From: Mobula hypostoma
Lineage: Eukaryota
Reading direction: 5' to 3'
Length of the DNA stretch: 64,000 bases
NCBI RefSeq assembly: GCF_963921235.1
Contig: NC_086110.1
Location: 558,001 to 622,000 of the forward strand
In this document: positions 5,621-64,000 of the stretch, in pieces
Numbering within the stretch: the first letter of the stretch is position 1
Layout of the letters: the number at the start of each line of letters is the position of its first letter
Translations under genes and position numbers: made by a program
Notes under the pieces: model-generated
What the model was told of the DNA's origin: nothing
The model's database searches: none
Seen by the model: only the letters and a program-made list of their open reading frames with translations

Positions 5621-5919
5621 TGTGAGCATTTCGGAGAGCTGGGGTGTGGTGGTTTCACATGATTGGTTAAATGTCCTGGTACATATTGTATGATTCGTTA
5701 ACTCTACTTCTTGTGGAAATATAATTCAGAAAATGGAAGTCGCCAAGAAGCTGAATTTGTATTATTTTTTTCTTCATGCAATTCTGAACCTGAAAAAAAG
5801 CTAGAAAATGAACGAGATGAAAGGTAATTAGTCAGCAGAAAAAATGTACGTAGTTGTCGGTTTGCAGGATGCAAACTGAACAATCTGTTGACAACAAACA
5901 CGAGATAATATGCAAATGC

Positions 5920-6460
5920 TGGAAATCTAAAGCAACACACACAAAATGCTGGAGGAACTCTGCAAACCAAGTAGCATTTATAGCCAAGAGTAAACAGTCG
6001 AGGTTTTAGGCAAGATCCTCAATCAGGATTGGAAGTGAAGGGAAGAAGTCAGAGTAAGAAGGACAGAGGGACAGGTGAGGATGAAGTAAAAGCTGGCAGG
6101 TGATAGGTGAAACCGGGAAAGGAGGAAGGGCCTGACGTAAAGAACTGGGAAGTTGATTGGTGGAAGAAATAAAGGTCTGGAGGGGGAGTTTGATAGCAGA
6201 AGGCAGTAGATCATGATAGAAAAGGAATGCATGACAGAAGTGATGGGCAGGTAAGAAGAGAAGCTGTGAGAAAGAAACAAGAATGGGGAATAGTGAGGGA
6301 GAGGAGGGTGCCGGGGGGTGGGGGGGGAGCAGGCGGGCGGATGGGAAGCAATTGGCGGAGTTTCGAGAAATCAATGTTCATGCCATCAGGTTGGAGGCTA
6401 CCCTGGCGGAATATGAGGCGTTGCTCCTCCAAATGGAGTGTAACCTCATTGTGGCAGTAG
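5920..6460 (-). mobile_element. Penelope-like 3' fragment
   Basis: EEQRLIFRQGSLQPDGMNIDFS plus terminal repeat. Confidence 0.75.
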
Positions 6461-9131: not shown

Positions 9132-9271
9132 NNNNNNNNNNNNNNNNNNNNNNNNNNNNNNNNNNNNNNNNNNNNNNNNNNNNNNNNNNNNNNNNNNNNN
9201 NNNNNNNNNNNNNNNNNNNNNNNNNNNNNNNNNNNNNNNNNNNNNNNNNNNNNNNNNNNNNNNNNNNNNNN
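9132..9271. other. Assembly gap (140 N)
   Basis: run of N. Confidence 1.
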
Positions 9272-13830: not shown

Positions 13831-13934
13831 TTAGAATGATTGCAAATAATTGACGATGAGCGCGATGCCCACTGTTATTACCAACAGACCCAGCAGAATT
13901 CGACACAGATTAATGCCTTGAGCCCACCGGGCTG
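13831..13934 (-). CDS. Gene A exon 4: transmembrane segment with Arg plus very short tail (activating type)
   Basis: tgtttcctag| acceptor, phase 1; AARWAQGINLCRILLGLLVITVGIALIVNYLQSF*; AAAAG|gtaaac donor 8 nt after the stop; linkage to the C1 exon is inferred from phase and position. Confidence 0.75.
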
Positions 13935-16346: not shown

Positions 16347-16500
16347 CCAAAATCATGACTTCTATATGTTTCAATGGATGGCGTCTTCATGGATTCATGA
16401 AACAACTGGCAAATATAAGTGGGTCTGCTGACTATTGCATTGACGGAGAACGCAGCTGCAATGTAATATGATATCCCACTATTCTTCTGTGTAGCCAGTA
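16347..16500 (-). pseudogene. Relic of a second C1 domain (3' half) directly downstream of the gene A C1 exon
   Basis: QKNSGISYYIAAAFSV...YICQLFHESMKTPSIETYR aligns with QNKEGLYLVSSSLNV...YTCQVFHESIKAPASESYR; similarity also visible in the DNA. Confidence 0.65.
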
Positions 16501-22317: not shown

Positions 22318-22638
22318 CGTGTACAATAACGTTCGTGCCATTGCCTTTGGAAATCTTTCCTGTCCAGTCTCTCACACCGCAATAAAATATTCCAGAGCCC
22401 CAGAATCTCACGTCGAAGATATGGAATTCGGCAGAACCTTGCTCTGTAGTTATAATACTTATCCTTCTGTCTGCAGTAGGATCTATATATCCTTCTTGTC
22501 CCCCTTTCCACCAATAAACAGCCACCGCTGCGTTCTGAGCGAAGATTAGGTAGGTGCAGTAAATTGACACATTTGCACCCTCTGCCTTAGTCTCTTTCAC
22601 AGGAATCTGGCGCACTGTGATCGAGGCCCTGTCAGCAA
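22318..22638 (-). CDS. Gene A exon 2: V-set Ig domain with germline-joined J-like strand (NKp30/SIRP-like)
   Basis: ttctgacag| acceptor and G|gtaaat donor; 321 nt, phase 1-1; VSIYC, VYWWK, AEFHIFDV, GIFYC and KGNGTNVIV motifs; no stop codons. Confidence 0.92.
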
Positions 22639-22882
22639 CTGTCAGAATGAAAAACAATCATTATCAGAGTATAATGGTTGGCTTTATTGACAAAAATATT
22701 AAAATAATATATGCATATGCAATATCACTCTGAAAGAAATAGTTCGATTCGACTGTGAGTAAAGTAAATCAATTTAAAATAACAAAACTGCTGTTTACTT
22801 CTTGGGCAGCTGCTCGTCGCAAACTGTTTCTGAATATCTCACAACTCGTTATTCCAGATCAAAAACGGAATTGTATACATAC

Positions 22883-26829: not shown

Positions 26830-27790
26830 CTTCAGAAATTTTGGGAGTACAATGTTTGCATGTACCTGTCAGAATAAAAGACAAAGCAAACAGGTTTTCT
26901 GACCCTTTGTTATTGAGAGATATCTGAAGCCTGGTTTAAAATAACAGAGAATTACAGAGCATATATTGCAGGGAGACATTGATAGGATGCAGAAGTGTGC
27001 TGAGAAGTGGCAGGTGGAGTTCAACCAAGAGGTGTGTGAGGTGGTACACTTTGGAAGGACAAATTCCACGGCAGAGTACAAAGTAAATGGCAGTATACCC
27101 GGAAGTGTGGAGGAGCAGAGGGACCTGGGGTGCATGTCCACAGATACCTGAAAGTTGCCGCACAGGTAGATAGTGTAGTTAAGAAAGGCTATGGGGTGTT
27201 AGGTTTCATTAGCCGAGGGATAGAGCTTAAGAGTCGCGAGGTAATGATGCAGCTCTATAAAACTTCTCTAGGGCACAGTTGGATTACTATGCCCAGTTAT
27301 TGTTGCCTCACTATAGGAAGGGTTTGGAGGCATTGGAAAGGGTACAGGGGAGATTTACTAGGATGCTGCCTGGTTTAGAGAGTATGCATCATGATCAGAG
27401 ATAAAGGGAGCTAAGGCTTTACTCTTTGGAGCGATGGAGGTTGAGAGGAGACATGGTAGAGGTATACAAGATATTACGAGGAATAGATAAAGTGGAAAGC
27501 CAGCGCCTGTTCGCCAGGGCACAACTGCTCAATACAAGAGGACATGGATTTAAGGTAAGGGGTGGAAAGTGCAAGGGGGTTATTAGAGGAAGCTTTTTTA
27601 CTCAGAGACTGGTTGGTGCGTGGAATGCACTGCCTGAGTCAGTGGTGAAGGCAGCTACATTAGTGAAATTTAAGAGTCTACTAGACAGGTTTATGGAGGA
27701 ATTTACGGTGGGGGTTTATATGGGAGGCAAGGTTTGAAGGTGGGCACAACATCGCGGGCCAAACGGCCTGTACTGTGCTATACTATTCGA
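26830..27790 (+). mobile_element. CR1-type LINE 3' fragment
   Basis: KWQVEFNQEVCEVVHFG, RLRGDMVEVYKI, TRGH motifs. Confidence 0.85.
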
Positions 27791-37367: not shown

Positions 37368-39318
37368 TATCACACTGTGCTGCTGGGAATGGACCCAAAT
37401 GCAAGACACAGACACTGAATTACAAGGAAAAGGACTTGTCTAGAGTAGGGACATGACAGGTTTCAGACCAGGAGCAGGCACAAGAATGCAGACTTGGGCT
37501 AGAGAAAGCTGGACCAGGAGAAGGAACCATGGTCTAGGCGACAAGGCTTGGACTCCGAGGACGAGAATGGACAAGGACCCAGAACCTGAGTCTTGCCTCG
37601 GACTGCTCGGACGTCAGATCCAGGCAAGGACATGACATTGCCCTGGGATCCTCGCGGCTGCGGCTCTTGGACCTTGGCCGCGAGATCCTCGAGGCTGCGG
37701 CTCTTGGAGCTTGGCCGCGAGATCCTCGAGGCTGGGGCTCTTGGAGCTTGGCCGCGGGATCCTCGAGGCTGGGGCTCTTGGAGCTTGGCCGCGGGATCCT
37801 CGAGGCTGGGGCTCTTGGAGCTTGGCCGCGGGATCCTCGAGGCTGGGGCTCTTGGAGCTTGGCCGCGGGATCCTCGAGGCTGGGGCTCTTGGAGCTTGGC
37901 CGCGGGATCCTCGAGGCTGGGGCTCTTGGAGCTTGGCCGCGGGATCCTCGCGGCTGGGGCTCTTGGAGCTTGGCCGCGGGATCCTAGAGGCTGGGGCTCT
38001 TGGAGCTTGGCCGCGGGATCCTCCAGCCTGCGGCTCTTGGAGCTTGGCCGCGGGATCCTCCAGCCTGCGGCTCTTGGAGCTTGGCCGCGGGATCCTCCAG
38101 CCTGCGGCTCTTGGAGCTTGGCCGCGGGATCCTCGAGGCTGGGGCGCTTGGAGCTTGGCCGCGGAATCCTCGAGGCTGGGGCTCTTGGAGCTTGGCCGCA
38201 GAATCCTCGAGGCTGGGGCTCTTGGAGCTTGGCCGCGGTATCCTCGAGGCTGGGGCTCTTGGAGCTTATCCGTGGGATCCTCGAGGCTGGGGTTCTTGGA
38301 GCTTGGCCGAGGGATCCTCGATCCTGCGGCTCTTGGAGCTTGCCCGCGAGATCCTCGAGGCTGCGGCTCTTGGAGCTTAGCCGCGAGATCCTCGAGGCTG
38401 GGTTCCTGGAGCTTGGCCGCGAGTTCCTCCAGGTTGGGGCTCTAGGAGCTTGGCCGCGGGATCCTCGAGGCTGGGGCTCTTGGAGCTTGGCTGCGGGATT
38501 CTCGAGTCCGGGGTGCTTGGAGCTTGGCTGCCGGATCGTCGAGGCCTGGGTTCTCAGAGCTCAGACACAGACTGGGAACTAAACATCAGCCTAGAGTCGG
38601 GGCTTATCCTTCGACAAGGCGGGACTCATCTTTAACACGACACTAACATGAGACAGGATAGAACGTAGACATAGAGCCGGGACTTATCCTAAGACAAGCC
38701 GGGAGTCAACTACTCCACAGCAGGGTGTGACAGGTCCATCTTTTGGGTAATGTCAGGACAGCCAGACTTACCCAACAGAGGCAAAGACAAGACAGGTCAC
38801 CCCGCAGGGCAACGGCAAGACGTCCTGACTTACCCCACGGAGGAGAGCACAAGAAAAGACGAACACCAAAGAACAACTGACGGTTCCATCTCTGCTCTGG
38901 GGTAGCTCCGAGTCTCAGTTTAGCCAGCAACCTCAGCTGGCTACAGAAACAGCCGGATCCCTCCCTAGCTCGGAGTGGCTGGCAGCCACTCAGCTAACCC
39001 GGGAACCAGCCGAATCTATACCGCAAAGACAGCTCCACCATTAGGCAACAAGGCTCCATGAAGCAGTTGTGCTCCAACCAGGCCTAGAGATCACAAATGG
39101 TTTCACTAGCCTTCCATCAGCAGGTTGTTCTCAGGGGGATTGACAAGACAAACCAGCAGCCCACACGCAATCCCAAGGCTGATTATGTTGCCAGCCCAAA
39201 GATGGGAATCAGGTGCCTTTGATTTAGTCAAACAAGGGACAGCTGGAAGACCCGGAGTCCTGAGTCCACGGACCAGACCATGAACGGGAATGCGGACTTC
39301 ACGGACCGGACCATGACA
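37368..39318. mobile_element. Solo LTR-like insertion of 1.95 kb interrupting a CR1
   Basis: TATCA...TGACA termini; flanks AGAGC/AGAAC; the CR1 3' region resumes exactly after it. Confidence 0.6.
37645..38560. repeat. 37-bp GC-rich minisatellite, about 25 units
   Basis: Unit GGCTCTTGGAGCTTGGCCGCGGGATCCTCGAGGCTGG; homogeneous centre and degenerate edges. Confidence 0.95.
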
Positions 39319-48920: not shown

Positions 48921-49603
48921 TTCCTCAGCACTCCCTACCCCTCCAGCTTAATTTGTGTCGACGTCATTTCGCAGCTGGACAAAATATAAGCTAATGCATT
49001 CTGAAGATTTACGTTCTCTGCAAGACGTGGAAGGGTGGTGAGATATCAGAAGAGAATCATAGATGATGTCTGAAATAGTGAAATGTTGTTGTAAGGAGCA
49101 GTTGGATAGGTTCGGATTACGAAGTTGAGGATGATTTTGTGGAAGTTTATTTACGTATGAGAGACACATGTAATCCAGATAGACAGTGTAATTTTACTAC
49201 GGCAGGGGAGTCCAGAACTTGAGAAGAACTGTTTGAAATGATGGTATTGAATTTCATAAGAAGAGTGTGTATTTAAGTAATAGGGTGTAGTAGGATGAGC
49301 TTCCCGGAAGGTTGTGGAAGCAGATACAGCCAACACTTAAAATCTATTTGAACTATGAATTACATAGGAAAATGTCGTGTGATGCGGGCTCAAGGCTGTT
49401 AATAGGGCTTTCGTTTCTATACAAATGCTGAGCTGAATACAATCTCCGATGCAATGGTCCATTAATTGTAGCTTTTTTTTGTTTTCTTGGACTTGGTGAT
49501 GTCTCATTAAAATCCTATGCTTACTCCACAGTTGTTACGAAACAGTAACAGAGTATGATTGATCTTGGGACACCACGATGGCCCGTAACGTTTAATACAA
49601 TTA

Positions 49604-49771
49604 TCAATGGCTATATGGTGCTCTTTTCGTTTCCAGATGTCTCGCCTCTTCCTTTATCTTTATTCCTGCATACTCGGTCCCATGAGTCTTCTGCACTCTT
49701 CTTGCGTTTTTCTGAGAAGCGGCGACATCCACACATGCATACATCAATTTATCCTCAGTTCCTTGTATGAT
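49604..49771 (-). CDS. Gene B: terminal cytoplasmic exon with ITIM (LMYACV) and ITSM (TEYAGI)
   Basis: tgtttccatag| acceptor after an 88-nt intron; phase 0; IIQGTEDKLMYACVDVAASQKNARRVQKTHGTEYAGIKIKEEARHLETKRAPYSH*; TGA at 49604-49606. Confidence 0.8.
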   Translation of the reverse strand: MIQGTEDKLMYACVDVAASQKNARRVQKTHGTEYAGIKIKEEARHLETKRAPYSH

Positions 49772-49859
49772 CTATGGAAACAATAATTAGAGATAAAGAG
49801 CTGCTGATCCAGTACTTTGAAAAACTGATTTGTGCAGTGAACTCTCTCTTTTATCTTAC

Positions 49860-49967
49860 CAGTGCATTAGTGCGTTCGGCTTCATATCTGACTTTCTTGT
49901 TTTTATTATCCCTTCTAAAATTTAGATCTGCATAGGAAGGACTGCCGATATCCTGGCTTTCTGAAGC
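49860..49967 (-). CDS. Gene B: cytoplasmic exon 2 with YADL motif
   Basis: ttgtttttctcag| acceptor and CTG|gtaag donor; 108 nt, phase 0-0; ASESQDIGSPSYADLNFRRDNKNKKVRYEAERTNAL. Confidence 0.8.
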
Positions 49968-50039
49968 CTGAGAAAAACAATTTTTTATACTTCAATTAAC
50001 TCTGCAATAACCAACACACTGTGGACAGAAAACAAGATT

Positions 50040-50960
50040 AATCGTAAACAACAGGAATTCTGCAGATGCTGGAAATTCAAGCAACACACATCAAAGTTGC
50101 TGGTGAACGCAGCAGGCCAAGCAGCATCTATAGGAAGAGGCGCAGTCGACGTTTCAGGCCGAGACCCTTCGTCAGGACTAACTGAAGGAAGAGTGAGTAA
50201 GGGATTTGAAAGCTGGAGGGGGAGGGGGAGATGCAGAATGATAGGAGAAGACAGGAGGGGGAGGGATGGAGCCGAGAGCTGGACAGGTGATAGGCAGAAG
50301 GGGATACGAGAGGAGCATGGGACAGGAGGTGCGGGAAGAAAGACGGGGGGGGGGGTGACCCAGAGGATGGGCAAGAGGTATATTCAGAGGGACAGAGGGA
50401 GAAAAAGGAGAGTGAGAGAAAGAATGTGTGCATAAAAAAGAGTAACAGATGGGGTACGAGGGGGAGGTGGGGCCTAGCGGAAGTTAGAGAAGTCAATGTT
50501 CATGCCATCAGGTTGGAGGCTACCCATACGGAATATAAGGTGTTGTTCCTTCAAACTGAGTGTGGCTTCATCTTTACAGTAGAGGAGGCCGTAGATAGAC
50601 ATGTCAGAATGGGAATGGAATGTGGAATTAAAATGTGTGGCCACTGGGAGATCCTGCTTTCTCTGGCGGACAGAGCGTAGATGTTCAGCAAAGCGGTCTC
50701 CCAGTCTGCGTCGGGTCTCGCCAATATATAGAAGGCCACATCGGGAGCACCGGACGCAGTATATCACCCCAGTCGACTCACAGGTGAAGTGATGCCTCAC
50801 CTGGAAGGACTGTTTGGGGCCCTGAATGGTGGTAAGGGAGGAAGTGTAAGGGCATGTGTAGCACTTGTTCCGCTTACACGGATAAGTGCCAGGAGGGAGA
50901 TCAGTGGGGAGGGATGGGGGGGGGGGGGGACGAATGGACAAGGGAGTTGTGTAGGGAGCG
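50040..50960 (-). mobile_element. Penelope-like 3' fragment with a well-preserved GIY-YIG endonuclease
   Basis: ORF 50474-50941: GVIYCVRCSRCGLLYIGETRRRLGDRFAEHL...; terminal repeat follows. Confidence 0.88.
50144..50179 (-). ncRNA. Minimal hammerhead ribozyme motif in the Penelope terminal repeat
   Basis: AGTC-CTGACGA-AGGGTCTCGGCCT-GAAAC-GTC-GACT: intact core, stem I AGTC/GACT, short stem II, palindromic ACGT stem III. Confidence 0.65.
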
Positions 50961-51110
50961 ATCCTACCTCCTTTGGGTCCTAGTGCATTGTATCCTTGTA
51001 AAACGCATCATTACTTGACAGATATTGGAAGATATAAATGTATACGGAAAATAAACAGTCCGTCTGATTTTCCTAAACAGTTGGTGAGCTCGTGTATGTG
51101 CCTATATATA

Positions 51111-52370
51111 CAGTGGCATGCAAATGTTTGGGCATCCCTATTCAAAATTTCTGTTACTGTGAATAAGCGAGTAAAAGATGACCTGATTTCGAAAAGACAT
51201 AAAGTTAAAGATGACACATTTCTTTAATATTTTAAGCATGATTACTTTCTTATCTCCATCTTTTACAGAATGAAAATAACAAAAAAAAACAAAGGAAAAG
51301 GGCCCGAAGCAAAAGTTTGGGCCCCCAGCCTGTCAGTACTTAGTACCAACCACTTTGGCAGGTATCTAGCTCTGTGAGATTCTTGGGCCGTCTTGCATGC
51401 ACTGCTCTTTTGAATTTCGATGATGTTTATGTCAGGGGACTGTGAGGGCCATGACGAGATCCTCAGCTGCGCCTCTTGAGGTATTCTATTGAGGACTTTC
51501 AAGTGTGTTTAGGATCATTATCCTGTTGTAGAAGTCATCCTCTTTCCATCTTCAGCTTTTTTAAAGACTGTGTGATGTTTGCTTCCGGAATTTGCTGGTA
51601 TGTAATTGAATTCATTCCTCCCTCTACCAGTGTAATGCTCTCCGTGCCGTTGGCTGCAACACAAGCTCAAATCATGATGAATCCACCCCGTGCTTAACCG
51701 TTGGAGAGATGTTTTTTTTCCAGGAAATTCTTCACCCTTTTTTTTTTACTCCAAATATACCTTTGCTTATTGCGGCGAAAAAGTTTTATTTTAACTTCAT
51801 CAGTCCAGAGGACTTGTTTTCAAAACGCATCAGGCTAGTTTAGATGTTACTTTGCAAACGTCTGATGCTGACTTTTAATGGTGAGGACGCAGGAAACATT
51901 TTCTTCTGATAACTCCTCCATGAAGGTTATATTTGTGCAGATATCGCTGCACAGTAGAACAGTGAACCACCACAGAGTCTGCTAAATCTTCCTGAACGTC
52001 TTTTGAAGTCAAATGTGAGTGTTGATTGCCTTTCTAGCAAACCTACGAGCAGTTCTCTCGGAAAGTTTTCTTGGTCTTCCAGACCTTAATTTGACCTCCA
52101 CTGTACCTGTTAACTGTCATTTCCTAATTACATTACAAGCTGAGGAAACAGCTACCCGAAAACGCTTCGCTATCTTCCTATAGCCTTCCCTTCTCCAGCT
52201 TTGTGGGCGTTATTTAATTTAATTTTCAGAGTGCTAGGTCGCTGCTTATAGGAGCCCATGGATGCTTTTGTAGCGACAGGGATTGAGTAGTCAGGGCATT
52301 TATGAAGCTTTGCAATTTGTATCACCTTGCGTTTGCTAACGATGATTGTGACAAGCCATAGCCCTAACAG
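51111..52370 (-). mobile_element. Tc1-family DNA transposon, decayed
   Basis: TA|CAGTGGCATGCAAA terminus; SSWPSQSPDINIIE motif from the DD34E region on minus. Confidence 0.85.
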
Positions 52371-52490
52371 CCAGTGCACCCCGGTCAAAATTGCTGTTAT
52401 GTGAATAGCAGAGCGAGTAATAGATTACCTGGCTTCCATAAGGGAATAAAATTAAAGATGACACATTTCTTTAATATTTTAAGCAAGATT

Positions 52491-55120
52491 ACATAGAACA
52501 TATAACATAGAATACCACAGACCCTTCGGCCCACAATGTTGTGCCGATCCTCAAACCCTGCCTCCCATATAACCCCCCAACTTAAATTCCTCCATATACC
52601 TGTCTAGTAGTCTCTTAAACTTCACGAGTGTATTTGCCCCCACCACTGACTCAGGGAGTGCATTCCACGCACCAACCACTCGGTGAATAAAAAACCTTCC
52701 TCTAATACCCCCCTTGAACTTCCCGCCCCTTAACTTAAAGCCATGTCCTCATGTATTGAGCAGTGGTGCCCTGGGGAAGAGGCGCTAGCTGTCCACTCTA
52801 TCTATTCCTCTTATTATCTTGTACACCTCTATCATGTCTCCTCTCATCCTCCTTCTCTGCAAAGAGTAAAGTCCTAGCTCCCTCAATCTCTGATCATAAT
52901 GCATACTCTGTAAAACAGGCAGCATCCTGGTAATTCTCCTCTGCACCCTTTCCAATGCTTCCACATCCTTCCTATAGTGAGGCGACCAGAATTGGACACA
53001 GTACTCCAAGTGTGGCCTAACCAGAGTTTTATAGAGCTGCATCATTACATCGCGACTCTTAAACTCTATCCCTCGACTTATGAAAGCTAACACTCCATAA
53101 GCTTTCTTAACTATCCTATCCACCTGTGAGGCAACTTTCAGGAATCTGTGGACATGTGCCCCAGATCTCTCTGCTCCCCCACACTACCATTCATCCTGCC
53201 ACTTACTTTGTACTCTGCATTGGAGTTTATCTTTCCAAAATGTACCACCTCACACTTCTACGGGGTGAATTCCATCTGCTACTTCTCAGCCCACTTCTGC
53301 ATCATGTCAATGTCTGTCTGCAATCTTCGACAATCCTCTACACTATCTACAACACCACCAACCTTTGTGTCGTCTGCAAACTTGCCAACCCACCCTTTCA
53401 ACCCCACATCCAGTTCGTTAATAAAAATCACGAAAAGTACAGATCCAAGAACAGATCCTTGTGGGACACCACTAGTCACAATCCTCCAATCTGAATGCAC
53501 TCCCTCCACCACGACCCTCTACCCTCTGCAGGCAAGCAAATTCTGAATCCACCTGGCCAAACTTCCCTGGATCCCATTCCTTCTGACTTTCTGAAGGTAC
53601 CGTGTGGTACCTTGTCAAATGCCTTACTAAAATCCATAAAGATCAGATCCACTGCACTTCCTTCATCTATATGCCTGGTCACCTCCTCAAAGAACATTAT
53701 CAGGCTTGTTAAACACGATCTGCCCTTCACAACGCAATGCTGACTGTCCCTGATCAGACCATGATTCTCTAAATGCCCATAGACCCTATCTCGAAGAATC
53801 TTTTCCAACAGCTTTCCCACAACAGACGCAAGGCTCACTGGTCTATAATTACCCGGACTATCCCTACTACCTTTTTTGAACAAGGGGACGATATTCGCCT
53901 CCCTCCAATCCTCTGGTACCATTCCTGTGGACAACGAGGACATAAAGATCCTAGCCTGAGACTTAGTAATCTCTTCCCTTGTCTCACGGAGCAGCCTGGG
54001 GGAATATTCCGTCAGGCACCGGGGACCTATCCGTCCTAATGTATTTTAACAGTTCCAACACATCCTCTCCCTTAATATTAGCATGCTCAAGAACATCAAC
54101 CTCACTCATATTGTCCTCTCCATCATCAAATTCCCTCTCATTGGTGAATACCGAAGAGAAGTATTCATTGCGGACCTCGCTCACTTCCAGAGCCTCCAGG
54201 CACATCTTCGCACCTTTATCTCTAATCAGTCCTACATTCACTCATGTCATCCTTTTGTTCTTCACATAATTGAAGAATGTCTTGGGGTTTTCCTTTACCT
54301 TACTCGCCAAGGCCTTCTCATGCCCCCTTCTTGCTCTTCGCAGCCCCTTCCTAAACTCCTTTCTTGCTTCCCTATATTCCTCAATAGACCCATCTGATCC
54401 TTGCTTCCTAAACCTCATGTATGCTGCCTTCTTCCACCTGACTAGATATTCCACCTCACTTGTGACCCATGGTTACTTCACCCTACCATTCTTTATCTTC
54501 CTCACCGGGACAAGTTTATCCCTTACGTCTTCCAAGAGATATCTAAACATCGACCACATGTCCATGGTACATTTCCCTTCAAAAACATCTTCCCAATTCA
54601 CACCCGCAGGTTCTAGCCTACTAGCCTCATAATTTGCCCTTCCCCAATTAAAAAAAAACTGTCCTCTCTGATTCTATCCTTTTGTATGATAATGCTAAAG
54701 GCCAGGGAGTGGTCGTCACTGTCCCCCAAGTGCTCACCCACTGAGAGTTCTGTGACCTGATCCTGTTCATTTCCTAGTAATAGATTTAGTATGGCATTTC
54801 CCATAGTCGTCGTGTCCACATACTGTGACAGGAATTCGTCCTGGACACATTTACCAAACTCTGCCCCATATAAACCCTTGAACCTGATCAGGTGCCAATC
54901 AATATTAGGGAAGTTAAAGTCACCCATGACAACAACACTGATATATTTGCACCTTTCCAAAATCCGCCACCCAATCTGCTCCTCTGTGTCTCTGCTGCTA
55001 CCAGGGGGCCTATACAATACCCCCAATAGAGTAACTGCTTCCTTCCTGTTCCTGACTTCCACCCATACTGACTCAAAAGAAGATCCTGCTTCATTACCCA
55101 TCTTTGCTGTAACTGTAATA
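52491..55120 (-). mobile_element. CR1-type LINE ORF2 (APE plus RT), frameshifted and 5'-truncated
   Basis: VVMGDFNFPNIDW APE; DFSKAFDKVPH, GVPQGSVLG and FADD RT; CATAGAA tail; inserted in the Tc1 TIR with flanking attac repeats. Confidence 0.92.
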
Positions 55121-55553
55121 GTATTACATTTTTATTTCCATCTTTTACAGTTTCCAAATAACAAAAGGGCCTGAAACAAAAGATTGGCCACCCTGCTTGG
55201 TCAGTACTTACTAACAACCCCTTTGGCAAGTATCACAGCTTGTAAACGCTTTTTGCAGACAGCTAAGAGTCTTTCCATTCTTCTTTGGGGGATTTCCACC
55301 CATGACATACCCCGTAACGTGCTTAAAAGAACCAGTAAAATGGAAGACACCTGGAGTGTGGTTTTGCTGTTAACTAACACTATTGTATTAGTAACTACGT
55401 AATAGAGTAACATAAAGCCAGAAAATCAAACAGGTTAGTATTTATTCATATATGGGTGTTTAAATACAAAACCCAAACTTCTTCAAACTTAGATGGTAAT
55501 TGATACAGTCTTACGATAGTGTGGTAAGGATGTTCAGTTCTGTCCACGGGATT

Positions 55554-55555
<2 letters not shown>

Positions 55556-55598
<43 letters not shown>
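55556..55598. repeat. (GA)n microsatellite
   Basis: direct reading. Confidence 0.95.
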
Positions 55599-55600
<2 letters not shown>

Positions 55601-57019
55601 CGTAATCCAAGTAGACAGGTGTCGTCGATCCTCTTCGATGCCCTCCCAAACTTCCAAGTTGGCCAAACGTGACCAACTTCAGAGCGCCGTTTTCAAGTGA
55701 TAATCTACCAAACCAGGCAAGTGTTAGACACACTGGTAGACTTCACAGGGTCGCTCTTTCATGCACTAATAATCACAGATCGATTCCACTTAATCGATCC
55801 TTAGTCCCTGTATCATTGTCCTGTTGTAGAAGCCATCCTCTTTTTATCTTCAGCTTCTTTACAGACGGTGTGATGTTTGCTTCCAGAAATTGCTGGTATT
55901 AATTGAATTCATTCTTCCCCCTACAAGTGAAATGTTCCCCATGTCACTGGCTGTAATACAAAGCCCAAAACATGCTTAGTCCAACCCCGCGCTTAACAGT
56001 TGGAGAGGGGTACTTTTCATCCAATTCTACATCCTTTGTTCTCCAAAACCTTTCCGGCATCCTCACCACAAACGTCAGCGTCACACGTTTGAAAAGTAAC
56101 ATCTAAACAAGCGTGATGCATTTTGAAAACAAGTTCTGTCGACTGATGAAGTTAAAATAGAACTTTATGGCCACAATAAGCAAAGGTATGCTTGGGAAAA
56201 ACGTGTGGAGAATTTCATGAAAAGAACACCTCTCCATCTGTTAAGCACGGGGGTGGATCGATCATGCTTTGAGCTTGTGTTGCAGCCGGGGGCACGGGAA
56301 GGATTTCAATAGTTAGGGAAGAACGAATTCAATTAAATACCAGCAAATAATGGAAGCAAACATCACACCGTCTGCAAAAAAGCAGAAGAGGAAAAGAGGA
56401 TGGTTTCTACAACAGGATAATGATCTTAAACACGCATTAAAATCGAAAACGGACTACCTTAAGAGGCGCAAGCTGAAAGTTTCGCCATTACCCTTACAGT
56501 CTCCCGACCTACACATCATCGAAAATTTATGGATAGACCTCAAAGGAGCAGTGTGTTCAAGATTGCCCAAGAATATCGCAGAACTACAAGCCTTTTGCAT
56601 GGAGGATTGGCGAAAATCTCCCCAACAACGGAAGGACACTTAGCTGGCTACAAAAAGCGATTACGAGCTGTGACACTTGCCAAAGGGGGTGTTTCTATGT
56701 ACTGACCATGTAGGGTGCCCAAACTTTTATTTCGTGACCTTTTATTTTTTTGTTATTTTGAAACTGCAAACGATGGAAATGAAAAAGTAATCCTGTTTAA
56801 ATTTTAAATAAATGTGTCATCTTTAACTCGCTTAGTTATGCACAGTAACATAAATTTTGACTGGGGTGTCAAAACTTTTGCATGGCACTGTATATCTCTA
56901 CAGACTTGCTAGTATCTTTGATAACATGCCGAATCTCTTCAAACTCCAAATCAAATATAGTTTCTGCCATGCCTTCCTTGTAATTGCATCGATATGATGA
57001 TGACATAAAAATATAATAT

Positions 57020-57845
57020 ATATAAAGACCATAAGACCATAAGATAAAGGAGCAGAATTCGTCCATTTGGCCCATCGAGTCTGCTCGGCCATTTTATTAT
57101 GAGTTGATCCATTCTCCAATTTAGTCCCACTCCCCGCCTTCTCACCATAACCTTTCATGCCCTGACTGCTCAGATACATATCAATCTCTGCCTTAAATAC
57201 ACCCAATTACTTGGCTCCACTGCCGCCTGTGGCAACAAATTCCATAGATTCACCACCCTCTGGCTAAAATAAAAATCTTCGCATCTCTGTTCTGAATGGG
57301 CGCCCTTCAATCCTTAAGTCATGCCGTCTCGTTCCAGACTCCCCCATCATGGGAAACAACTTTGCCACATCCACTCTGTCCATGCCTTTCAACATTCAGA
57401 ATGTTTCTATGAGGTCCCCCTCATTCTTCTAAACTCCAAGGAATACAGTCCGAGAGCGGACAAACGCACCTCACATGTTAACCCTCTCATTCCCGGACTC
57501 ATTCTAGTGAATCTTCTCTGTACCCTCCACAACATCAGCACATCCTTTCTTAAAAAAAGAGACCAAAAGTGCCCACAGTACTCCAAGTGAGGTCTTACAA
57601 GCGCCTTATAGAGCCTCAACATCACATTCCTGCGCCTGTACTCTATTCCTCTAGAAATAAATGCCAACATTGCATTCGCCCTCTTCACCACCGAGTCAAC
57701 CTGGAGTTTAACCTTAAGGGTATCCTGCACGAGGACTCCCCTGTCCTGTTGCATCTCAGAAGTTTGAATTCTCTTCCCATTTAAATAATAGTCTGTTCGT
57801 TTATTTCTTCTGCCAATGTGCATAACCATACACTTTGCAAGTGTA
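57020..57845 (-). mobile_element. CR1-type LINE 3' fragment
   Basis: YKALVRPHLEYC...RVQRRFTRM; aagaccataagaccataag tail. Confidence 0.85.
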
Positions 57846-57847
57846 CG

Positions 57848-57867
57848 TGTGTGTGTGTGTGTGTGTG
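57848..57867. repeat. (GT)n microsatellite
   Basis: direct reading. Confidence 0.9.
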
Positions 57868-58389
57868 TATACTAACGAAATAAATAGAAGAGCGTCTAGT
57901 GCTGAATTCTGACAGATTATGATGTCGACACGTTCTAAAGATGATGCCCATGTCGTGGGATCTGACGACGTCGACACCATAGTCTCTCAAATATTAGCAC
58001 CATCGACTGTCCTAAACATTACTTTGTTAGTACGAATGCCCAAATAGAAAATTATGGGCCTCAAGTAAAATGATTCACGCAGGTTCAGTCCGATTAGGTA
58101 AAAATATCAAATGCAACAGGAACTTCAACAGCTCCTGAATAAGACCATAAGACCATAAGACACAGAGTAGAATTAAGCCATCTGGCCCATCGAGTCTGCT
58201 CTGCTTTATTTTCTCCTCCTCAACTCCAGTTCCCGGCCTTGTCCCCGTAACCTTTGATGCCATGCTCAATCAAGAATCAATCCATCTCTGCCTTAAATAC
58301 AACCAATGACCTGGCCTCCACAGCTATAAGTGGCAACAAATTCCACAAAATCGCGACCTTTTGTCTCCTTTCCTTTTTTCACTCTAAAA

Positions 58390-58550
58390 TTGTACAAAAC
58401 AACAATAATACTCTAAACTTAAAATGTTGAAACGAATGTTTCATATTTAACTTTATGACTTTTGGAGATCAGCTCATCTTGTACTCACTTAACTATTCAC
58501 AGTAAAATAAATTTTGACCAGGGGTGTCCAAACAATTACATGCCACTGCA
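58390..58550 (+). mobile_element. Tc1 terminal inverted repeat fragment
   Basis: aattttgaccaggggtgtcc...catgccactg matches the same TIR family. Confidence 0.65.
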
Positions 58551-58689
58551 CTAGCTACTGACCTAACCTTTATTTTGTTAGTATTAATGTCCAATTAGAA
58601 AATGACTGGACTCAAGTAAAATGATTCACGCAGATTCAGCCTGATTAGTTAAAATATCAAATGTAGTGTCTTGGGGGTTCCTGAATAAG

Positions 58690-59190
58690 ACCAGAAGACC
58701 ATAACACATAGGAGCAGAATTAAGCCATCTGGCCCATCGAGTTTGCTCTGCCGTTCAACCATGCCTATCATTTATTTTCTTCTCCTGAACTCCAGTTCCC
58801 GGCCTTCTTCCCGTAACTTTTGATGCCATGTTCAATCAAGAGCCTGTCCATCTCTGCCTTAAATACACCTAATGAATTGGCCTACACAGCGATATGCAGA
58901 AAAAAAAAAAATCCACAAATTCACAACTTTCGGCTATAGAACATTCTCCGGCTCTCGGTCTGGAAGGGCGCCCGTCTATCCTGAGGCTTTGCTGTCTTGT
59001 CCGAGACTCTCCGACCACGGGAAACATCATTTCCACATCAACTTTGTCTAGGCCTTTCAACATTCGAAAGGTTTCAGTGAGATCCCCCTCAGCCTTTTGA
59101 ATTCCAGCAAGTGCAGACCCAGAGCCATCAAACTTCCCTCGTGTGAGACAGCTTTCATTCCTGGAATCGTCCTTGTGAAACTCCTCTGAA
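58690..59190 (-). mobile_element. CR1-type LINE 3' fragment
   Basis: GDLTETFRMLKGLD...SRTR motif and tail. Confidence 0.75.
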
Positions 59191-59383
59191 TAAATATATC
59201 GCTGAAGATGCTGCACTACATAAGCCAGAGATACAAAACAAAAATGAACCATGCGATCCTAGAACATAAGGTGTTACACGCAAAGTGACAGCCATCCTGT
59301 TGCTCTAATTATGTGCTACTGATATTGGATGTATGTACAGAATATGTAAACCCTTGTATATGTCATAATAATATTAATCTTAC

Positions 59384-59430
59384 CTGATTTTCCTGGTAGC
59401 GACTTAAGTTCTCATCATTTTCCGCTGCGA
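59384..59430 (-). CDS. Gene B: cytoplasmic exon 1
   Basis: tttttatttcctctag| acceptor and CAG|gtaaga donor; 47 nt, phase 1-0; VAAENDENLSRYQENQ. Confidence 0.75.
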
Positions 59431-59913: not shown

Positions 59914-60024
59914 CTTCAGTCCTGTCTACTCTGAAACGCCTGATAAGTAACAACAGCGCGAGGATAATGACTCCGCAGGCTGCAAGTGCACCCGTCAGGA
60001 TGAAGATGAACTGGTGTCTGCTTT
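59914..60024 (-). CDS. Gene B: uncharged transmembrane exon
   Basis: cacacctcag| acceptor and G|gtaag donor; 111 nt, phase 1-1; ESRHQFIFILTGALAACGVIILALLLLIRRFRVDRTE, with a basic stop-transfer cluster. Confidence 0.85.
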
Positions 60025-61099: not shown

Positions 61100-64000
61100 G
61101 ATATCTCACTCTTCGTTGCATAGCCAGTGCCTTACATTTCCCTTTCCCCCTTTGAATATGTCCCCTTCCTCTCTGTTTGTGATGAATTGATAAATGCCAG
61201 ACATAAAACATGCGGTTGAGAATATAAGCCTCTTACCTAGTCCGATTCTATATGACTCGGAGGCTGGCGCCTTCATAGATTCATGAAACACATGGCAAGT
61301 ATAAACAGACCAGCTTTCTATTACATTAAGGGAGCTTGAAACTAGATATAATCCCTCCTTGTTCTGCATTTGTGTGGTATGTATTCCAGAAGTGATTTCG
61401 ACTTCATTTTTATACCATATGAGCTCATAGCCCTTCGGAAAAAAAGCAGCAGTTGTGCACGTCAGAGCCACGGAAGGAACGTTCACTTCGGTGATTTTCA
61501 ACGGCGCCGGCGGAACTGCAAATGGTTGAAAAAGAGGTAAAATCTCTAAACGCGCCTTTATCAGAGAAAATAATCGCTGACAGAAAAATATACTTCACAA
61601 CTTGGAGTGTTAATTTGAATTTAACTTGAAAACATTCATCCCAAGTCAAGCAGTTTACGTATTTTAGCATGACGTTTTATGTGGCGATATACATTTTCAT
61701 TAGTTTTTATTTTTTCATTGAATAGAACACTGAAGTTTCAGGTGAAGGTATCAAGGATAAATTAAATAAAAGCTTTCTGCGTTACCCCATGACTCCGTGA
61801 CCACTATTTATTTATCTTTATTCCACATGCAAAAAGCTACAATAAGATTAGTTTGTTTCTGTTAGTTTGTCTAATCTTAAATTCACATTTTATAAATTAT
61901 TGAATTTACATTGTGAGAACTTTCTGCTCGTTCTTTAATGTGTTGTGCTGTAAAACATTTCGGCTTAGGTCTTCGTAATTCTTCTAATGTTCCATATGTC
62001 GTAATTGTTATACGTCAAAACAACAGAACCCCACTACCAATTGCACAAACAAATGAATTATTTCTGGAAATACTGAATTCAGTTTGAATCCCATTATATT
62101 TTTCATCGACTTTTCATACCGATTGAAAATATATGCAGGTTTAGTCACGTCAATAACCTTACAACGTGTTACATCGAAAAAATAATTTGATGGTAGAGCA
62201 AACTTCTCTTAGCTAACGTATTTTATAGTAATTGTGTTGTTATCAAGTGTTTATTTGCATTCTATCAGATCCTGCGTAATAATTATTTCATTCTCCTTTA
62301 TAATTGGGTACAGGAATTACATGAAGCAATCTTAAATCTTGAATTTGGGACCTTCACTGCAGATACCAGTTCCACATTTCGGATTAGTATTGGTTCCATA
62401 GAACCAATCAGGTGGGCGAGATTGAGTCAAAACAAAGCGAGGAAAGTTGATAACAAAACGCAGGTTAACTATTTTTGGAGAAACTTAAGGGAAGGAGGCT
62501 TTGGAAGCAAGGTGGGCTACACTATCTAGTATGATTAACGGCCAAAATCTTACAATGCAGAAGGACGTCCGAGATTTTGTTTAATGACATAATGATGCAA
62601 AATGATGCGGTGAGTAATTCATAATACAATAGTTGTGTTACTATCAAAAACCATTTAAGGAAAACAGCGTTCAATTAAGAATGTGATTCAGCAGCGACAG
62701 AATAACCCAAGAAGCTGATGGAACAAATCTCCTTCTTGTACACAGTGTAAATCCTACACTAGGTTTAATGAGAAAACCAGATCAATTTATAAACAGAAAT
62801 AAAAATGCCACTTTTAAATAAGGAAAAAGTGTTGTATCAACTGTTCCGTAACTGGCTTAATAATATGTTACTATTTAGAGGAAACGGAATAAAGGTATCT
62901 ATCTGAATGGACTGGAGGTGGAAATCAGTATATATGGAGAGGATATGGAACTTGTGCTTGTTGCAATGATTGGCTGAAAGTAGTTCGGCACAACATCATT
63001 CTGTATAATCGACAGGCATTGAAATGCTAACTGATCAGATTCCTATAAGGACAATAATTAAATATCTCAGAATTCATCACACATGCGATTGGTTATCCAA
63101 CAACGCTCTAATCTGTGTTGCATTAAGACTCCTTATTCCAACATGTGTACCCGGAACAAACCTGTTTGAAATACGAGAATCATCGGGAAATATTTAACAG
63201 TGCGATGTGTTCTATTTTCTACATTAAATTCGACCAAGGCTTAAACAGTAATTGGGAGTTCCATAGGGAGGGTTGACGTAAACAGAACCCTAGTGCCGCA
63301 CGTGGCTAATCCCTTAAGGTAGTGACACAGATGGGTAATGTGGTGAAGAAGACGATTTGAAATTCCTGCCTGCTGGTCAACAATTCGGACGTCAGAAATT
63401 GCACAAGTCGTTGCTAAGAACACACTAGAGATATTTTCCGCGGTTCCCTTGGCCTAGCCACAGCACAGATGTCATTAATCTGGTATGAATGCGTGCAACA
63501 CTGGGTCTGGAGGGTTTCATTTACATGGAGAATCTACGACTCTTGGTCTGCAGAGAAGGAGGTCGAAGGGTGATCTGATAGATGCTTATAAAGTTATAAG
63601 GACCTAGATAACATGGGTATTCAGAGTCTTCTTCCCAGATTCTCGGTGTCTGCAACTGGAGAGATAGACTTAAAATGAATGGCGTAGGTTTAAATTGAAC
63701 TTAAAACGTACCTTTTTCTACTCACTTGGCAGTTGGTACATGTAAAGGCATGCACAAGGAAGCTGAGGAAGCGTGATAAATGAAAATGCCCCCCCCCCCC
63801 AAAAAAAAAACATTCAGGCATGCGAATGAATTGCAAAAAAATCTGTTCAGGGATATTGTGGTTTGTTCGGCATTTCAGATTTGGGTTGAGAAGTGTCCGT
63901 CTTGGTTGTATACACCTACGAGTCGTGTGAAAAAAAAAATCAAATGATTTTTGTGCATTTTAATAATCTTTGAATTGCAGCGGTTAAAAAGGTTTCCTGC
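61100..64000. repeat. Segmental duplication, copy 2
   Basis: Colinear with about 16480-19313; the last bases (ttgcagcggttaaaa..gtttcctg) match 19290-19313. Confidence 0.95.
61237..61515 (-). CDS. Gene B: C1-set Ig domain exon (paralog of 16622-16900)
   Basis: ttgcag| acceptor and G|gtaag donor; 279 nt; 85 of 93 residues identical to the gene A C1 by manual alignment. Confidence 0.92.

What the first reader, a model, noticed from the sequence alone, without database searches (positions are those of the whole stretch)
49604..49967. SIRP-alpha-like Tyr-motif tail located 9.4 kb from the preceding exon
Seen: two phase-0 exons, not called by the ORF track on this strand, encoding PSYADL, LMYACV and TEYAGI. 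Established: (I/L/V/S)xYxx(L/V/I) is the ITIM consensus and TxYxx(V/I) the ITSM; human SIRP-alpha uses YADL and TEYASI motifs to recruit SHP-1/2. Inference: gene B is inhibitory and its tail is related to, or convergent with, SIRP-alpha.
Basis: partly seen in the sequence, partly recalled or inferred. Interest (0 to 1): 0.7.

Follow-up and report, generated by a model that had tools for sequence, protein, structure and literature searches.

The report
Inhibitory tail exons of ray receptor
These are the last two coding exons of a devil-ray immune-receptor gene, separated from the rest of the gene by a 9.4 kb intron full of transposons; they encode an inhibitory-type tyrosine tail that NCBI's automatic annotation already predicts, so the finding is correct but largely ordinary.

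Summary

NCBI already joins them to the exon ending at 59384. RefSeq XP_062923416.1 (LOC134356411 isoform X2, Mobula hypostoma) matches the window's transmembrane (TM), juxtamembrane and both tail exons at 100%. Contigs from RNA-like public runs cover only the two exons, show the 49860|49771 junction, and stop 4 nt past the 49967 acceptor. That is the result expected if the upstream exon ends in TCAG, as the 59384 exon does.

The 9,416-nt intron is mostly transposons.

One correction: PSYADL has Pro at position -2, so it is not a canonical ITIM. Only LMYACV (ITIM) and TEYAGI (ITSM), 23 residues apart, fit the consensus motifs.

The gene belongs to a V(J)-C1 receptor family that my searches found only in sharks, rays and a chimaera. 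NCBI names its members inconsistently. The scan has already reported this family elsewhere in this genome.

Shark members carry four tail tyrosines spaced 23/13/23, in the same motif order as SIRP-alpha. Rays have lost the second tyrosine. Whether the tail is homologous to SIRP-alpha's or convergent with it remains open, and the ectodomain is not SIRP-like.

The neighbouring gene A is the activating partner.

The parts
61237..61515 (-). C1-set Ig exon of gene B (LOC134356411), 279 nt, phase 1/1; skipped in RefSeq isoform X2
   Evidence: Splice sites read. Pfam C1-set E=2.8e-12. 92% identical to P0002 residues 126-224. dN/dS 0.22 against the gene A C1 exon.
59914..60024 (-). Transmembrane exon, 111 nt, phase 1/1. 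Encodes (E)SRHQFIFILTGALAACGVIILALLLLIRRFRVDRTE, with no charged residue in the membrane span.
   Evidence: Sequence and splice sites. 100% match to P0007 residues 126-162.
59384..59430 (-). Juxtamembrane exon, 47 nt, phase 1 in and 0 out. Encodes VAAENDENLSRYQENQ; donor CAG|gtaagat.
   Evidence: 100% match to P0007 residues 163-178.
49968..59383 (-). Intron of 9,416 nt, mostly transposon-derived. It holds a very abundant short repeat (50044-50400), a Penelope-like GIY-YIG element (50461-51007), a sense-oriented LINE with endonuclease and RT (about 52517-55131), a Tc1/mariner-like DDE remnant (about 55950-56700, + strand) and LINE 3' fragments (57026-57871, 58681-59258).
   Evidence: Pfam hits GIY-YIG, RVT_1, Exo_endo_phos_2 and DDE_3. 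37% of the intron is repeated elsewhere in the window, and about two thirds when the TE ORFs are added (my estimate). No other Ig, TM or tail exon lies in it by tblastn.
49860..49967 (-). Tail exon 1, 108 nt, phase 0/0. Encodes ASESQDIGSPSYADLNFRRDNKNKKVRYEAERTNAL (YADL motif, Pro at -2).
   Evidence: 100% match to P0007. Contig X1 record 1 covers 49860-49971 with 0 differences and has 15-17 unaligned letters on each side.
49772..49859 (-). 88-nt intron, GT..AG on the minus strand
   Evidence: Joint 49771|49860 'skips 88, CT..AC' in contigs of runs X3 and X5; zero depth inside it.
49604..49771 (-). Tail exon 2 coding part: 55 codons plus TGA. Carries ITIM LMYACV and ITSM TEYAGI, 23 residues apart.
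   Evidence: 100% match to P0007 residues 215-269. 93% identical to two Mobula birostris proteins.
49130..49603 (-). Probable 3' UTR, with AATAAA at 49151-49146
   Evidence: X3 contig record 17 runs on from the stop codon to 49258 and has 137 further letters. Poly(A) signal scan. The 3' end itself is inferred.

Best explanation
Window 49604-49967 (minus strand) holds the two terminal coding exons of Mobula hypostoma LOC134356411 ('gene B'). This is a type I membrane receptor with the layout leader - germline-joined V(J) domain - one C1-set domain - uncharged TM - cytoplasmic tail. The exons are spliced to the juxtamembrane exon ending at 59384 across a 9.4 kb intron that transposon insertions have inflated. 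The tail carries a canonical ITIM (LMYACV) and ITSM (TEYAGI) 23 residues apart, preceded by a YADL motif. The likely mechanism is inferred, not shown: after ligand engagement, Src-family kinases phosphorylate the two tyrosines; the pair then docks the tandem SH2 domains of SHP-1/SHP-2; these phosphatases damp activating signals. Those activating signals would include ones from the neighbouring gene A (LOC134356409), which has a 95%-identical V domain but an Arg-containing TM and no signalling tail. The receptor thus works like SIRP-alpha, PD-1 or BTLA, but it belongs to a family seen only in cartilaginous fish and is not a demonstrable SIRP orthologue.
For: Shown:
- Exon borders, phases and splice sites are read directly from the sequence.
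- A search with exon 2 alone against 1.84 billion representative proteins found two Mobula birostris proteins in which this tail follows V-(C1)-TM.
- RefSeq XP_062923416.1 (P0007) is 100% identical to the window's TM, juxtamembrane and both tail exons, including the junction ...YQENQ|ASESQ....
- No other receptor exon lies between 59384 and 49967.
- RNA-like contigs cover only the exons. The 49860|49771 junction appears in two runs. All four contigs over tail exon 1 stop at 49971, 4 nt (TCAG) past the acceptor, as expected if the upstream exon ends ...ATCAG like the 59384 exon. One contig is identical to the window over 112 nt.
- The same runs X1 and X3 also hold words from the TM/juxtamembrane stretch.
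- Tail motifs and their spacing are conserved across Mobula, Hemitrygon, Heptranchias, Heterodontus, Scyliorhinus, Hemiscyllium and Carcharodon.
- Gene A is P0008/P0009: the same ectodomain, a TM reading INLCRILLGL and a stop soon after.
Inferred from established knowledge: an ITIM-ITSM pair 23-26 residues apart binds the tandem SH2 domains of SHP-1/2, as in the SIRP-alpha 'BTAM' peptide quoted in PMC5589908.
Against: - The 59384->49967 junction was not read letter by letter in RNA. The loose-end letters were not listed, and the stretch limit prevented laying both sides together.
- The runs are only guessed to be RNA, and several contigs are 92-96% identical, so they come from a relative or a paralogue.
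- Near-identical paralogues exist in the cluster, so a contig could come from another copy.
- The RefSeq model is an automatic prediction.
- No biochemical evidence exists for phosphorylation or SHP binding.
- PSYADL is not a canonical ITIM.
Confidence: 0.85

Rival explanations
1. The tail is truly homologous to the SIRP-alpha tail. Both would descend from one ancestral 'double ITIM/EYAxI' cytoplasmic cassette that existed before cartilaginous and bony vertebrates split, making this family the chondrichthyan counterpart of SIRPs.
For: Shark members have four tyrosines in the order xxYA(A/D)(I/L)NF, T(V/L/E)YAQ(T/I), L(T/I)YASLD, (A/V)EYAxI, spaced 23/13/23. SIRP-alpha has ITYADLNL, then TEYASI 24 residues later (PMC5589908), then LTYADL (PMC5413580), then SEYASVQV (PMC13131406). 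Alignment scores to the SIRP-alpha Y1-Y2 peptide exceed shuffles: z=7.3 for Hemitrygon, 4.8 for Heptranchias, and p about 0.016 for gene B. Both families have V(J) plus C1-set ectodomains and an activating partner with a basic TM residue. NCBI's naming pipeline picked SHPS-1 (SIRP-alpha) as the name for several members.
Against: Shuffling destroys the short motifs, so the statistic cannot separate homology from convergence on SH2 binding. No SIRP from bony vertebrates was found by the tail-only or profile searches, though both are limited by the word index. There is one C1 domain, not two. The V profile's best 60 PDB matches are pIgR, TCR-alpha, VNAR and PD-L1, not SIRP, and the single gene B C1 sequence matches antibody heavy chains and CD276 best. 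An unrelated multi-V shark receptor (P0035) carries YADIQF-24-TEYAAI as well, so the cassette either moves between families or arises repeatedly. Other NCBI names for members (tapasin-related, CD276, NCR3LG1, H-2, Ig lambda) show that the labels are only generic Ig hits.
Confidence: 0.3
2. The resemblance to SIRP-alpha is convergent. Any receptor that recruits SHP-1/2 through tandem SH2 domains ends up with hydrophobic-x-Y-A-x-(L/V) and (T)-E-Y-A-x-I motifs about 23-26 residues apart.
For: From my own knowledge, the same TEYA(S/T)I ITSM and spacing occur in PD-1 and BTLA, which are not SIRP relatives. Similarity outside the motifs is negligible (alignment). The ectodomain is not SIRP-like. No SIRP was recovered.
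Against: Matching order and spacing across four motifs in shark members is more than a single ITIM/ITSM pair would require.
Confidence: 0.55
3. The two exons are not part of gene B's usual mRNA. They could be relic exons of a decayed paralogue, or be used mainly by read-through or chimeric transcripts from another copy in the tandem cluster, with the RefSeq model being a prediction artefact.
For: The junction to 59384 was not read directly in RNA. The intron is unusually long compared with a paralogue whose three small tail exons reportedly lie within about 2.1 kb (scan note s1-144707, not checked). The cluster has many similar copies on the same strand.
Against: The reading frame is intact, the splice sites are consensus and the phases fit. 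A contig with 0 differences over exon 1 has non-genomic letters on both sides exactly at the predicted borders, and all contigs show the TCAG overhang. No other upstream exon lies in the 9.4 kb. The orthologous-looking M. birostris gene spans 18.9 kb, so a long intron is likely there too.
Confidence: 0.07
4. The tail is not purely inhibitory. The ITSM could recruit SAP/EAT-2-type adaptors (a switch function), and YADL could serve as a YxxPhi endocytosis signal.
For: TxYxx(V/I) is by definition a switch motif. PSYADL lacks the hydrophobic -2 residue that SHP SH2 domains prefer, but it does fit YxxPhi (established knowledge).
Against: The ITIM-23-ITSM arrangement and the pairing with an activating neighbour favour inhibition. 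Nothing here tests adaptor binding.
Confidence: 0.15

Closest known systems
SIRP-alpha (SHPS-1, PTPNS1) and the SIRP alpha/beta paired receptors
   Same: Type I IgSF receptor with a J-like motif at the end of the V domain and a C1-set domain. The tail has YADL(N) and TEYAxI motifs 23-24 residues apart, and shark relatives have four tyrosines in the same order. A neighbouring activating partner has a near-identical ectodomain and a basic residue in the TM. NCBI names several members 'tyrosine-protein phosphatase non-receptor type substrate 1-like'.
   Different: One C1 domain instead of two. The V profile is closest to pIgR, TCR-alpha and VNAR, not SIRP. No significant tail similarity outside the motifs. 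The ray tail has lost the second tyrosine, and YADL has Pro at -2. The partner's TM residue is Arg in an NxxR context rather than the Lys of SIRP-beta. Orthology, synteny and CD47 binding are untested.
PD-1 / BTLA type ITIM + ITSM co-inhibitory receptors (CD28 family, PMC11599192)
   Same: One ITIM followed about 23-25 residues later by a TEYAxI-type ITSM. The V domain ends in a GNGT motif resembling the GxG G-strand motif noted for CTLA4.
   Different: CD28-family members have a single V domain and no C1 domain. This family has V plus C1 and an activating paired partner.
UrIg / UrIg2, non-rearranging VJ-C1 genes of elasmobranchs (PMC12227049)
   Same: A germline-joined VJ exon followed by C1-set domains, non-rearranging, and restricted to cartilaginous fish.
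   Different: Per the paper, nurse shark UrIg2 has nine C1-type domains, and the paper does not mention ITIM, ITSM or SIRP anywhere. This family has a single C1 and an ITIM/ITSM tail.
Other paired ITIM / charged-TM IgSF families (KIR, LILR, PIR, CEACAM; teleost NITR)
   Same: The logic of inhibitory and activating genes with nearly identical ectodomains lying side by side in a multigene cluster.
   Different: Those families use C2/I-set or V-only ectodomains. A V(J)-C1 ectodomain is otherwise typical of antigen receptors, SIRP and tapasin. This comparison rests on my own knowledge, not on a test here.

Membership tests
ITIM/ITSM inhibitory IgSF receptor (functional class) | At least one (S/I/V/L)xYxx(I/V/L) motif in the cytoplasmic tail | tested here: met
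   LMYACV fits. PSYADL does not, because of Pro at -2 (regex scan).
ITIM/ITSM inhibitory IgSF receptor (functional class) | TxYxx(V/I) ITSM placed about 20-30 residues after the ITIM, to fit tandem SH2 domains | tested here: met
   TEYAGI lies 23 residues after the ITIM tyrosine. The spacing of 23 is conserved in all ray and shark members that keep both motifs.
ITIM/ITSM inhibitory IgSF receptor (functional class) | Uncharged transmembrane segment (no adaptor-coupling residue) | tested here: met
   The TM reads FIFILTGALAACGVIILALLLLI with no charged residue. By contrast, gene A's TM reads INLCRILLGL.
ITIM/ITSM inhibitory IgSF receptor (functional class) | Phosphotyrosine-dependent binding of SHP-1/SHP-2 and inhibition of signalling | not testable with these tools
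   Needs biochemistry.
SIRP family | Ectodomain of one V and two C1-set domains | tested here: not met
   The full-length models are 361 aa with V, one C1, then TM. In gene B a single C1 exon lies upstream of the TM exon in the window, and in gene A a single intact C1 exon lies between the V and TM exons.
SIRP family | V and C1 domains closest to SIRP among known proteins | tested here: not met
   For the V profile against the PDB, the best 60 matches are pIgR, TCR-alpha, VNAR and PD-L1. For the single gene B C1 sequence, the best 60 are antibody heavy chains and CD276. SIRP is absent from both lists, although antibodies crowd them.
SIRP family | Tail with four tyrosines in two ITIM-type pairs (YADL...EYASI, YADL...EYASV) | tested here: inconclusive
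   Shark members have four motifs in the same order, spaced 23/13/23. Gene B keeps YADL, ITIM and ITSM but lacks the second tyrosine. The similarity is at motif level only.
SIRP family | Detectable sequence homology to SIRPs of bony vertebrates | tested here: not met
   The tail-only search gave 7 hits, all batoid. The family-profile search gave 36 hits, all chondrichthyan. Both searches depend on shared 5-residue words, so distant kin may have been missed.
SIRP family | Orthologous genomic location; binding of CD47 | not tested
   The window holds only the receptor genes and transposons. No flanking marker genes were examined.
UrIg / UrIg2 | VJ followed by several C1 domains; the paper reports no ITIM tail | tested here: not met
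   This family has a single C1 and an ITIM/ITSM tail. The paper has no occurrence of ITIM, ITSM or SIRP.
CD28 / PD-1 family | A single extracellular V domain | tested here: not met
   A C1-set domain is present. The family definition is taken from PMC11599192.

The most novel reading that the evidence does not exclude
The chondrichthyan V(J)-C1 receptors would be the cartilaginous-fish counterpart of the SIRP family. Their ancestral tail, still intact in sharks, is a double ITIM/EYAxI cassette (spacing 23/13/23) homologous to the four-tyrosine SIRP-alpha tail. If so, the SIRP-type SHP-recruiting module and the inhibitory/activating pairing would predate the split of cartilaginous and bony vertebrates. 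Rays, including gene B here, would have secondarily lost the second tyrosine at the tail exon 1 / exon 2 border.
Probability: 0.3. Interest if true: 0.55.

Novelty: new member of a known kind. Interest (0 to 1): 0.33.

Why it matters
For the genome, it confirms that a gene model spanning a 9.4 kb transposon-filled intron is right, and that LOC134356411, labelled 'uncharacterized', is very probably an inhibitory receptor paired with its activating neighbour LOC134356409.

More broadly, this V(J)-C1 paired-receptor family of sharks, rays and chimaeras is absent from the papers I could search and carries contradictory automatic names. A non-rearranging, antigen-receptor-like ectodomain on a SIRP/PD-1-like tail bears on how inhibitory signalling cassettes and antigen-receptor domains were combined in early jawed vertebrates.

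The finding itself adds little beyond existing annotation and earlier reports of this scan.

Tried and rejected
- Pfam on the tail exons gave nothing meaningful. ESM Atlas on the tail gave only a 0.81 hit to an unnamed cluster, which is uninformative.
- The tail-only protein search at E<=10 returned only batoid family members.
- The look-up of encoding contigs returned no DNA for P0002 because the sample's file is too large, giving only the gene span of 18.9 kb. It found no record for P0007, because only the longest isoform of a gene is indexed.
- I did not build isoform X1 for a look-up, because that would have meant typing a long sequence.
- Read laying could not cover both 59384 and 49967, which are 9.4 kb apart against a 6 kb limit. 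The loose-end letters at 49971 were not among those listed, so the key junction was tested only through the 4-nt overhang.
- UrIg/UrIg2 and the CD28 family were considered as identities and rejected on domain architecture.
- Complex prediction with SHP-2 was not attempted.
- Gene A has no relic of the inhibitory TM or tail exons, and gene B has no relic of the activating TM exon.

Full report
**What is in the sequence**

On the minus strand, the stretch 49967-49860 is an exon of 36 codons. It follows a strong pyrimidine tract and AG (…ttgtttttctcag|GCTTCAG) and ends at CTG|gtaagat. An 88-nt intron follows. Then 49771-49607 gives 55 codons, ending in TGA at 49606-49604. Both exons are in phase 0.

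Upstream on the same strand lie three more exons:
- a C1-set Ig exon, 61515-61237, phase 1/1 (Pfam C1-set E=2.8e-12);
- a transmembrane (TM) exon, 60024-59914, phase 1/1;
- a 47-nt juxtamembrane exon, 59430-59384, phase 1 in and 0 out, with donor CAG|gtaagat.

The phases therefore fit a 59384->49967 splice across 9,416 nt.

**Do the exons belong to gene B?**

I searched exon 2 alone (55 aa) against 1.84 billion representative proteins. It found only two proteins, both from Mobula birostris and 93% identical to the query. In both, the tail follows V-(C1)-TM-juxtamembrane sequence.

A homologue search with one of them returned Mobula hypostoma proteins. One is P0007 = XP_062923416.1, 'uncharacterized protein LOC134356411 isoform X2'. 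tblastn shows that P0007 residues 126-269 map at 100% identity onto the window's TM, juxtamembrane and two tail exons, in order. Its V domain is only 92% identical to the V exon at 22.3-22.6 kb. Its own V exon must therefore lie beyond the window's end, as scan note s1-144111 also says.

Isoform X2 skips the C1 exon, which keeps the frame because the exon is phase 1/1. tblastn with four family proteins finds no other Ig, TM or tail exon between 59384 and 49967, so no hidden gene could own the tail exons.

**RNA evidence**

I laid contigs of four RNA-like public runs on 49200-50400. Depth falls only on 49575-49773 and 49860-49971. It is zero in the 88-nt intron and zero in 49979-50019.

- A 793-nt contig (X3, record 17) joins 49771 to 49860. 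The skipped piece reads CT..AC on the plus strand, which is GT..AG on the gene strand. The contig continues through the stop codon to 49258, with 137 further letters. This fits use of the AATAAA at 49151.
- A second run (X5) shows the same joint.
- In run X1 (organism A), a 144-nt contig matches 49860-49971 with no difference. It has 17 and 15 unaligned letters at its two ends, so it is spliced on both sides.
- All four contigs over this exon stop at 49971, 4 nt beyond the acceptor. The intron ends …CTCAG and the 59384 exon ends …ATCAG. A transcript joined 59384|49967 would therefore match the genome for exactly those four letters (TCAG) and no further.

This is indirect. I could not read the junction itself, because the two sides are 9.4 kb apart, the stretch limit is 6 kb, and the relevant loose ends were not listed.

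Runs X1 and X3 also hold words from the TM/juxtamembrane stretch.

Caveats: the runs are only guessed to be RNA, though exon-only coverage and spliced contigs argue that they are. Organism B's contigs are 92-96% identical, so they come from a relative or a paralogue.

**Why the intron is long**

The intron contains:
- a short repeat at 50044-50400 that attracts a summed contig depth of 10^5-10^6;
- a Penelope-like GIY-YIG ORF at 50477-51007;
- a sense-oriented LINE with an endonuclease ORF (54616-55131) and a reverse transcriptase ORF (53479-54045);
- a Tc1/mariner-like DDE remnant on the other strand;
- two LINE 3' fragments.

Of the intron, 37% is repeated elsewhere in the window. With the TE ORFs added, I estimate about two thirds is transposon-derived. 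The similar M. birostris gene spans 18.9 kb.

**The motifs**

LMYACV fits the ITIM consensus and TEYAGI fits the ITSM consensus. Their tyrosines are 23 residues apart.

It is a YxxL motif and could also serve as a YxxPhi sorting signal.

The TM segment has no charged residue.

Background six-frame translations of the window make an ITIM plus an ITSM in 91 aa a roughly 0.4% event. Conservation is the stronger argument: the motifs are invariant or nearly so across rays and sharks.

**The family**

A profile of six members found 36 proteins at E<=0.001. All are from cartilaginous fish: Mobula, Hemitrygon, Heptranchias, Heterodontus, Scyliorhinus, Hemiscyllium, Chiloscyllium, Carcharodon, Cetorhinus, Mustelus, Stegostoma and Callorhinchus.

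Their automatic names disagree: SHPS-1-like, tapasin-related, CD276 homolog, NCR3LG1-like, H-2 class I-like and Ig lambda-like.

- The V domain ends in a J-like GNGT-x-(V/L)-IV motif. Its profile matches pIgR D1, TCR-alpha V-J, VNAR and PD-L1 best in the PDB, not SIRP.
- The gene B C1 sequence matches antibody constant domains and CD276 best.
- The family is not UrIg/UrIg2, which have many C1 domains and no ITIM in the paper (PMC12227049).
- It is not the CD28/PD-1 family, whose members have a single V domain (PMC11599192).
- I found no paper describing it.

Earlier follow-ups of this scan reached the same view for other copies in this genome. My searches agree with those notes independently.

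**Relation to SIRP-alpha**

Shark members carry four tail tyrosines: xSYA(A/D)(I/L)NF, T(V/L/E)YAQ(T/I), L(T/I)YASLD and (A/V)EYAxI. The spacing is 23/13/23, and it is strictly conserved across the shark members that keep these motifs (Heptranchias, Heterodontus, Scyliorhinus, Hemiscyllium).

SIRP-alpha has:
- ITYADLNL, then TEYASI 24 residues later (peptide in PMC5589908);
- then LTYADL (PMC5413580);
- then SEYASVQV at the C-terminus (PMC13131406 and PMC6003199).

The SIRP-alpha inter-pair spacings (17 and 26) are from my memory only.

So the order of motif types and the pair spacing agree. Rays have lost the second tyrosine: RT-NAL against shark RTVYAQ, right at the tail exon 1 / exon 2 border. 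This leaves one degenerate pair and one intact pair.

Local alignment of the gene B tail to the published SIRP-alpha peptide scores 33, and 77-85 of 5,000 shuffles reach that score. Hemitrygon gives z=7.3 and Heptranchias z=4.8. Shuffling destroys the motifs, however, so this cannot separate common descent from convergence on tandem-SH2 binding.

A tail-only search found no SIRP. An unrelated multi-V shark receptor (P0035) also carries YADIQF-24-TEYAAI, so the cassette is either mobile between receptor families or easily re-evolved.

I put homology at about 0.3 and convergence at about 0.55. Membership of the SIRP family fails on domain number and on ectodomain similarity.

**Paired partner**

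Gene A in the same window comprises a V exon at 22319-22657, a C1 exon at 16614-16901 and a TM exon at about 13834-13940. It is LOC134356409 (P0008/P0009).

- Its V domain is 95% identical to gene B's.
- Its C1 exon has dS 0.18 and dN/dS 0.22 against gene B's.
- Its TM reads INLCRILLGL…, and the protein stops soon after.
- DNA homology between the two genes runs from the window's end down to about 140 nt past the C1 exon and then stops.

The two genes therefore share ectodomain exons but have unrelated membrane and tail exons, which is the classic paired inhibitory/activating layout. Activating forms with the same NxxR-type TM exist in Heptranchias and Chiloscyllium, so both forms predate the shark-ray split.

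**Verdict**

The exon assignment is right and is already in RefSeq as an automatic model. The inhibitory function is a sound inference. The SIRP-alpha relationship stays open, and the four-motif collinearity in sharks is the most interesting lead. This is a further member of a receptor family that the scan has already reported elsewhere in this genome, so its interest is modest.

Noticed in passing
window 13834-13940, 16614-16901, 22319-22657 (minus strand): Gene A (LOC134356409, P0008/P0009) is the activating partner of gene B. Its V domain is 95% identical and its C1 about 90% identical, but its TM carries Arg (INLCRILLGL) and it has almost no tail. DNA homology with gene B ends about 140 nt after the C1 exon (B 61094 / A 16464).
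   Followed up: partly
window 16340-16621 (minus strand): A stop-free stretch just downstream of gene A's C1 exon encodes a diverged copy of the C-terminal half of a C1 domain (…YICQLFHESMKTPSIETYR…; 34-41% identical to family C1 by tblastn). It is probably a decayed partial exon duplication.
   Followed up: partly
window 50044-50400: A short interspersed repeat just upstream of the tail exon. Contigs of all four RNA-like runs pile on it with a summed depth of 10^5-10^6 and many 'opposite strand' joints. Copies occur elsewhere in the window (5911-6058, 9974-10027, 12885-12981).
   Followed up: no
window 52517-55131 (minus strand): A LINE (endonuclease and reverse transcriptase ORFs, broken by stops) sits in the sense orientation inside the 9.4 kb intron. 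An 85%-identical copy of its 3' part lies at 26965-27771.
   Followed up: partly
window 37645-38550: A tandem array of 24.5 copies of a 37-nt GC-rich unit (92% matches). It reads as long repetitive ORFs in all three plus-strand frames and lies inside the GC-rich 30-40 kb block, which looks like retroelement sequence.
   Followed up: partly
window 9132-9271: An assembly gap of 140 N. Left untouched.
   Followed up: no
P0016 (Scyliorhinus canicula, 450 aa): The RefSeq model contains the TM-plus-tail block twice in tandem (…PIYADINF…TEYAQI…LIYASLDV… repeated). This is either a real internal duplication or two neighbouring genes fused by the predictor.
   Followed up: no
P0035/P0036 (Stegostoma tigrinum): A receptor with three or four tandem V(J)-like domains carries a tail with TVYATV, YADIQF and TEYAAI, the last two exactly 24 residues apart as in the SIRP-alpha peptide. 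The same tail cassette therefore sits on a different ectodomain.
   Followed up: partly
P0006 (Mobula hypostoma, 326 aa): A paralogue model lacks tail exon 1 (the YADL exon) but keeps the ITIM/ITSM exon. The exon is phase 0/0, so skipping it keeps the frame.
   Followed up: no
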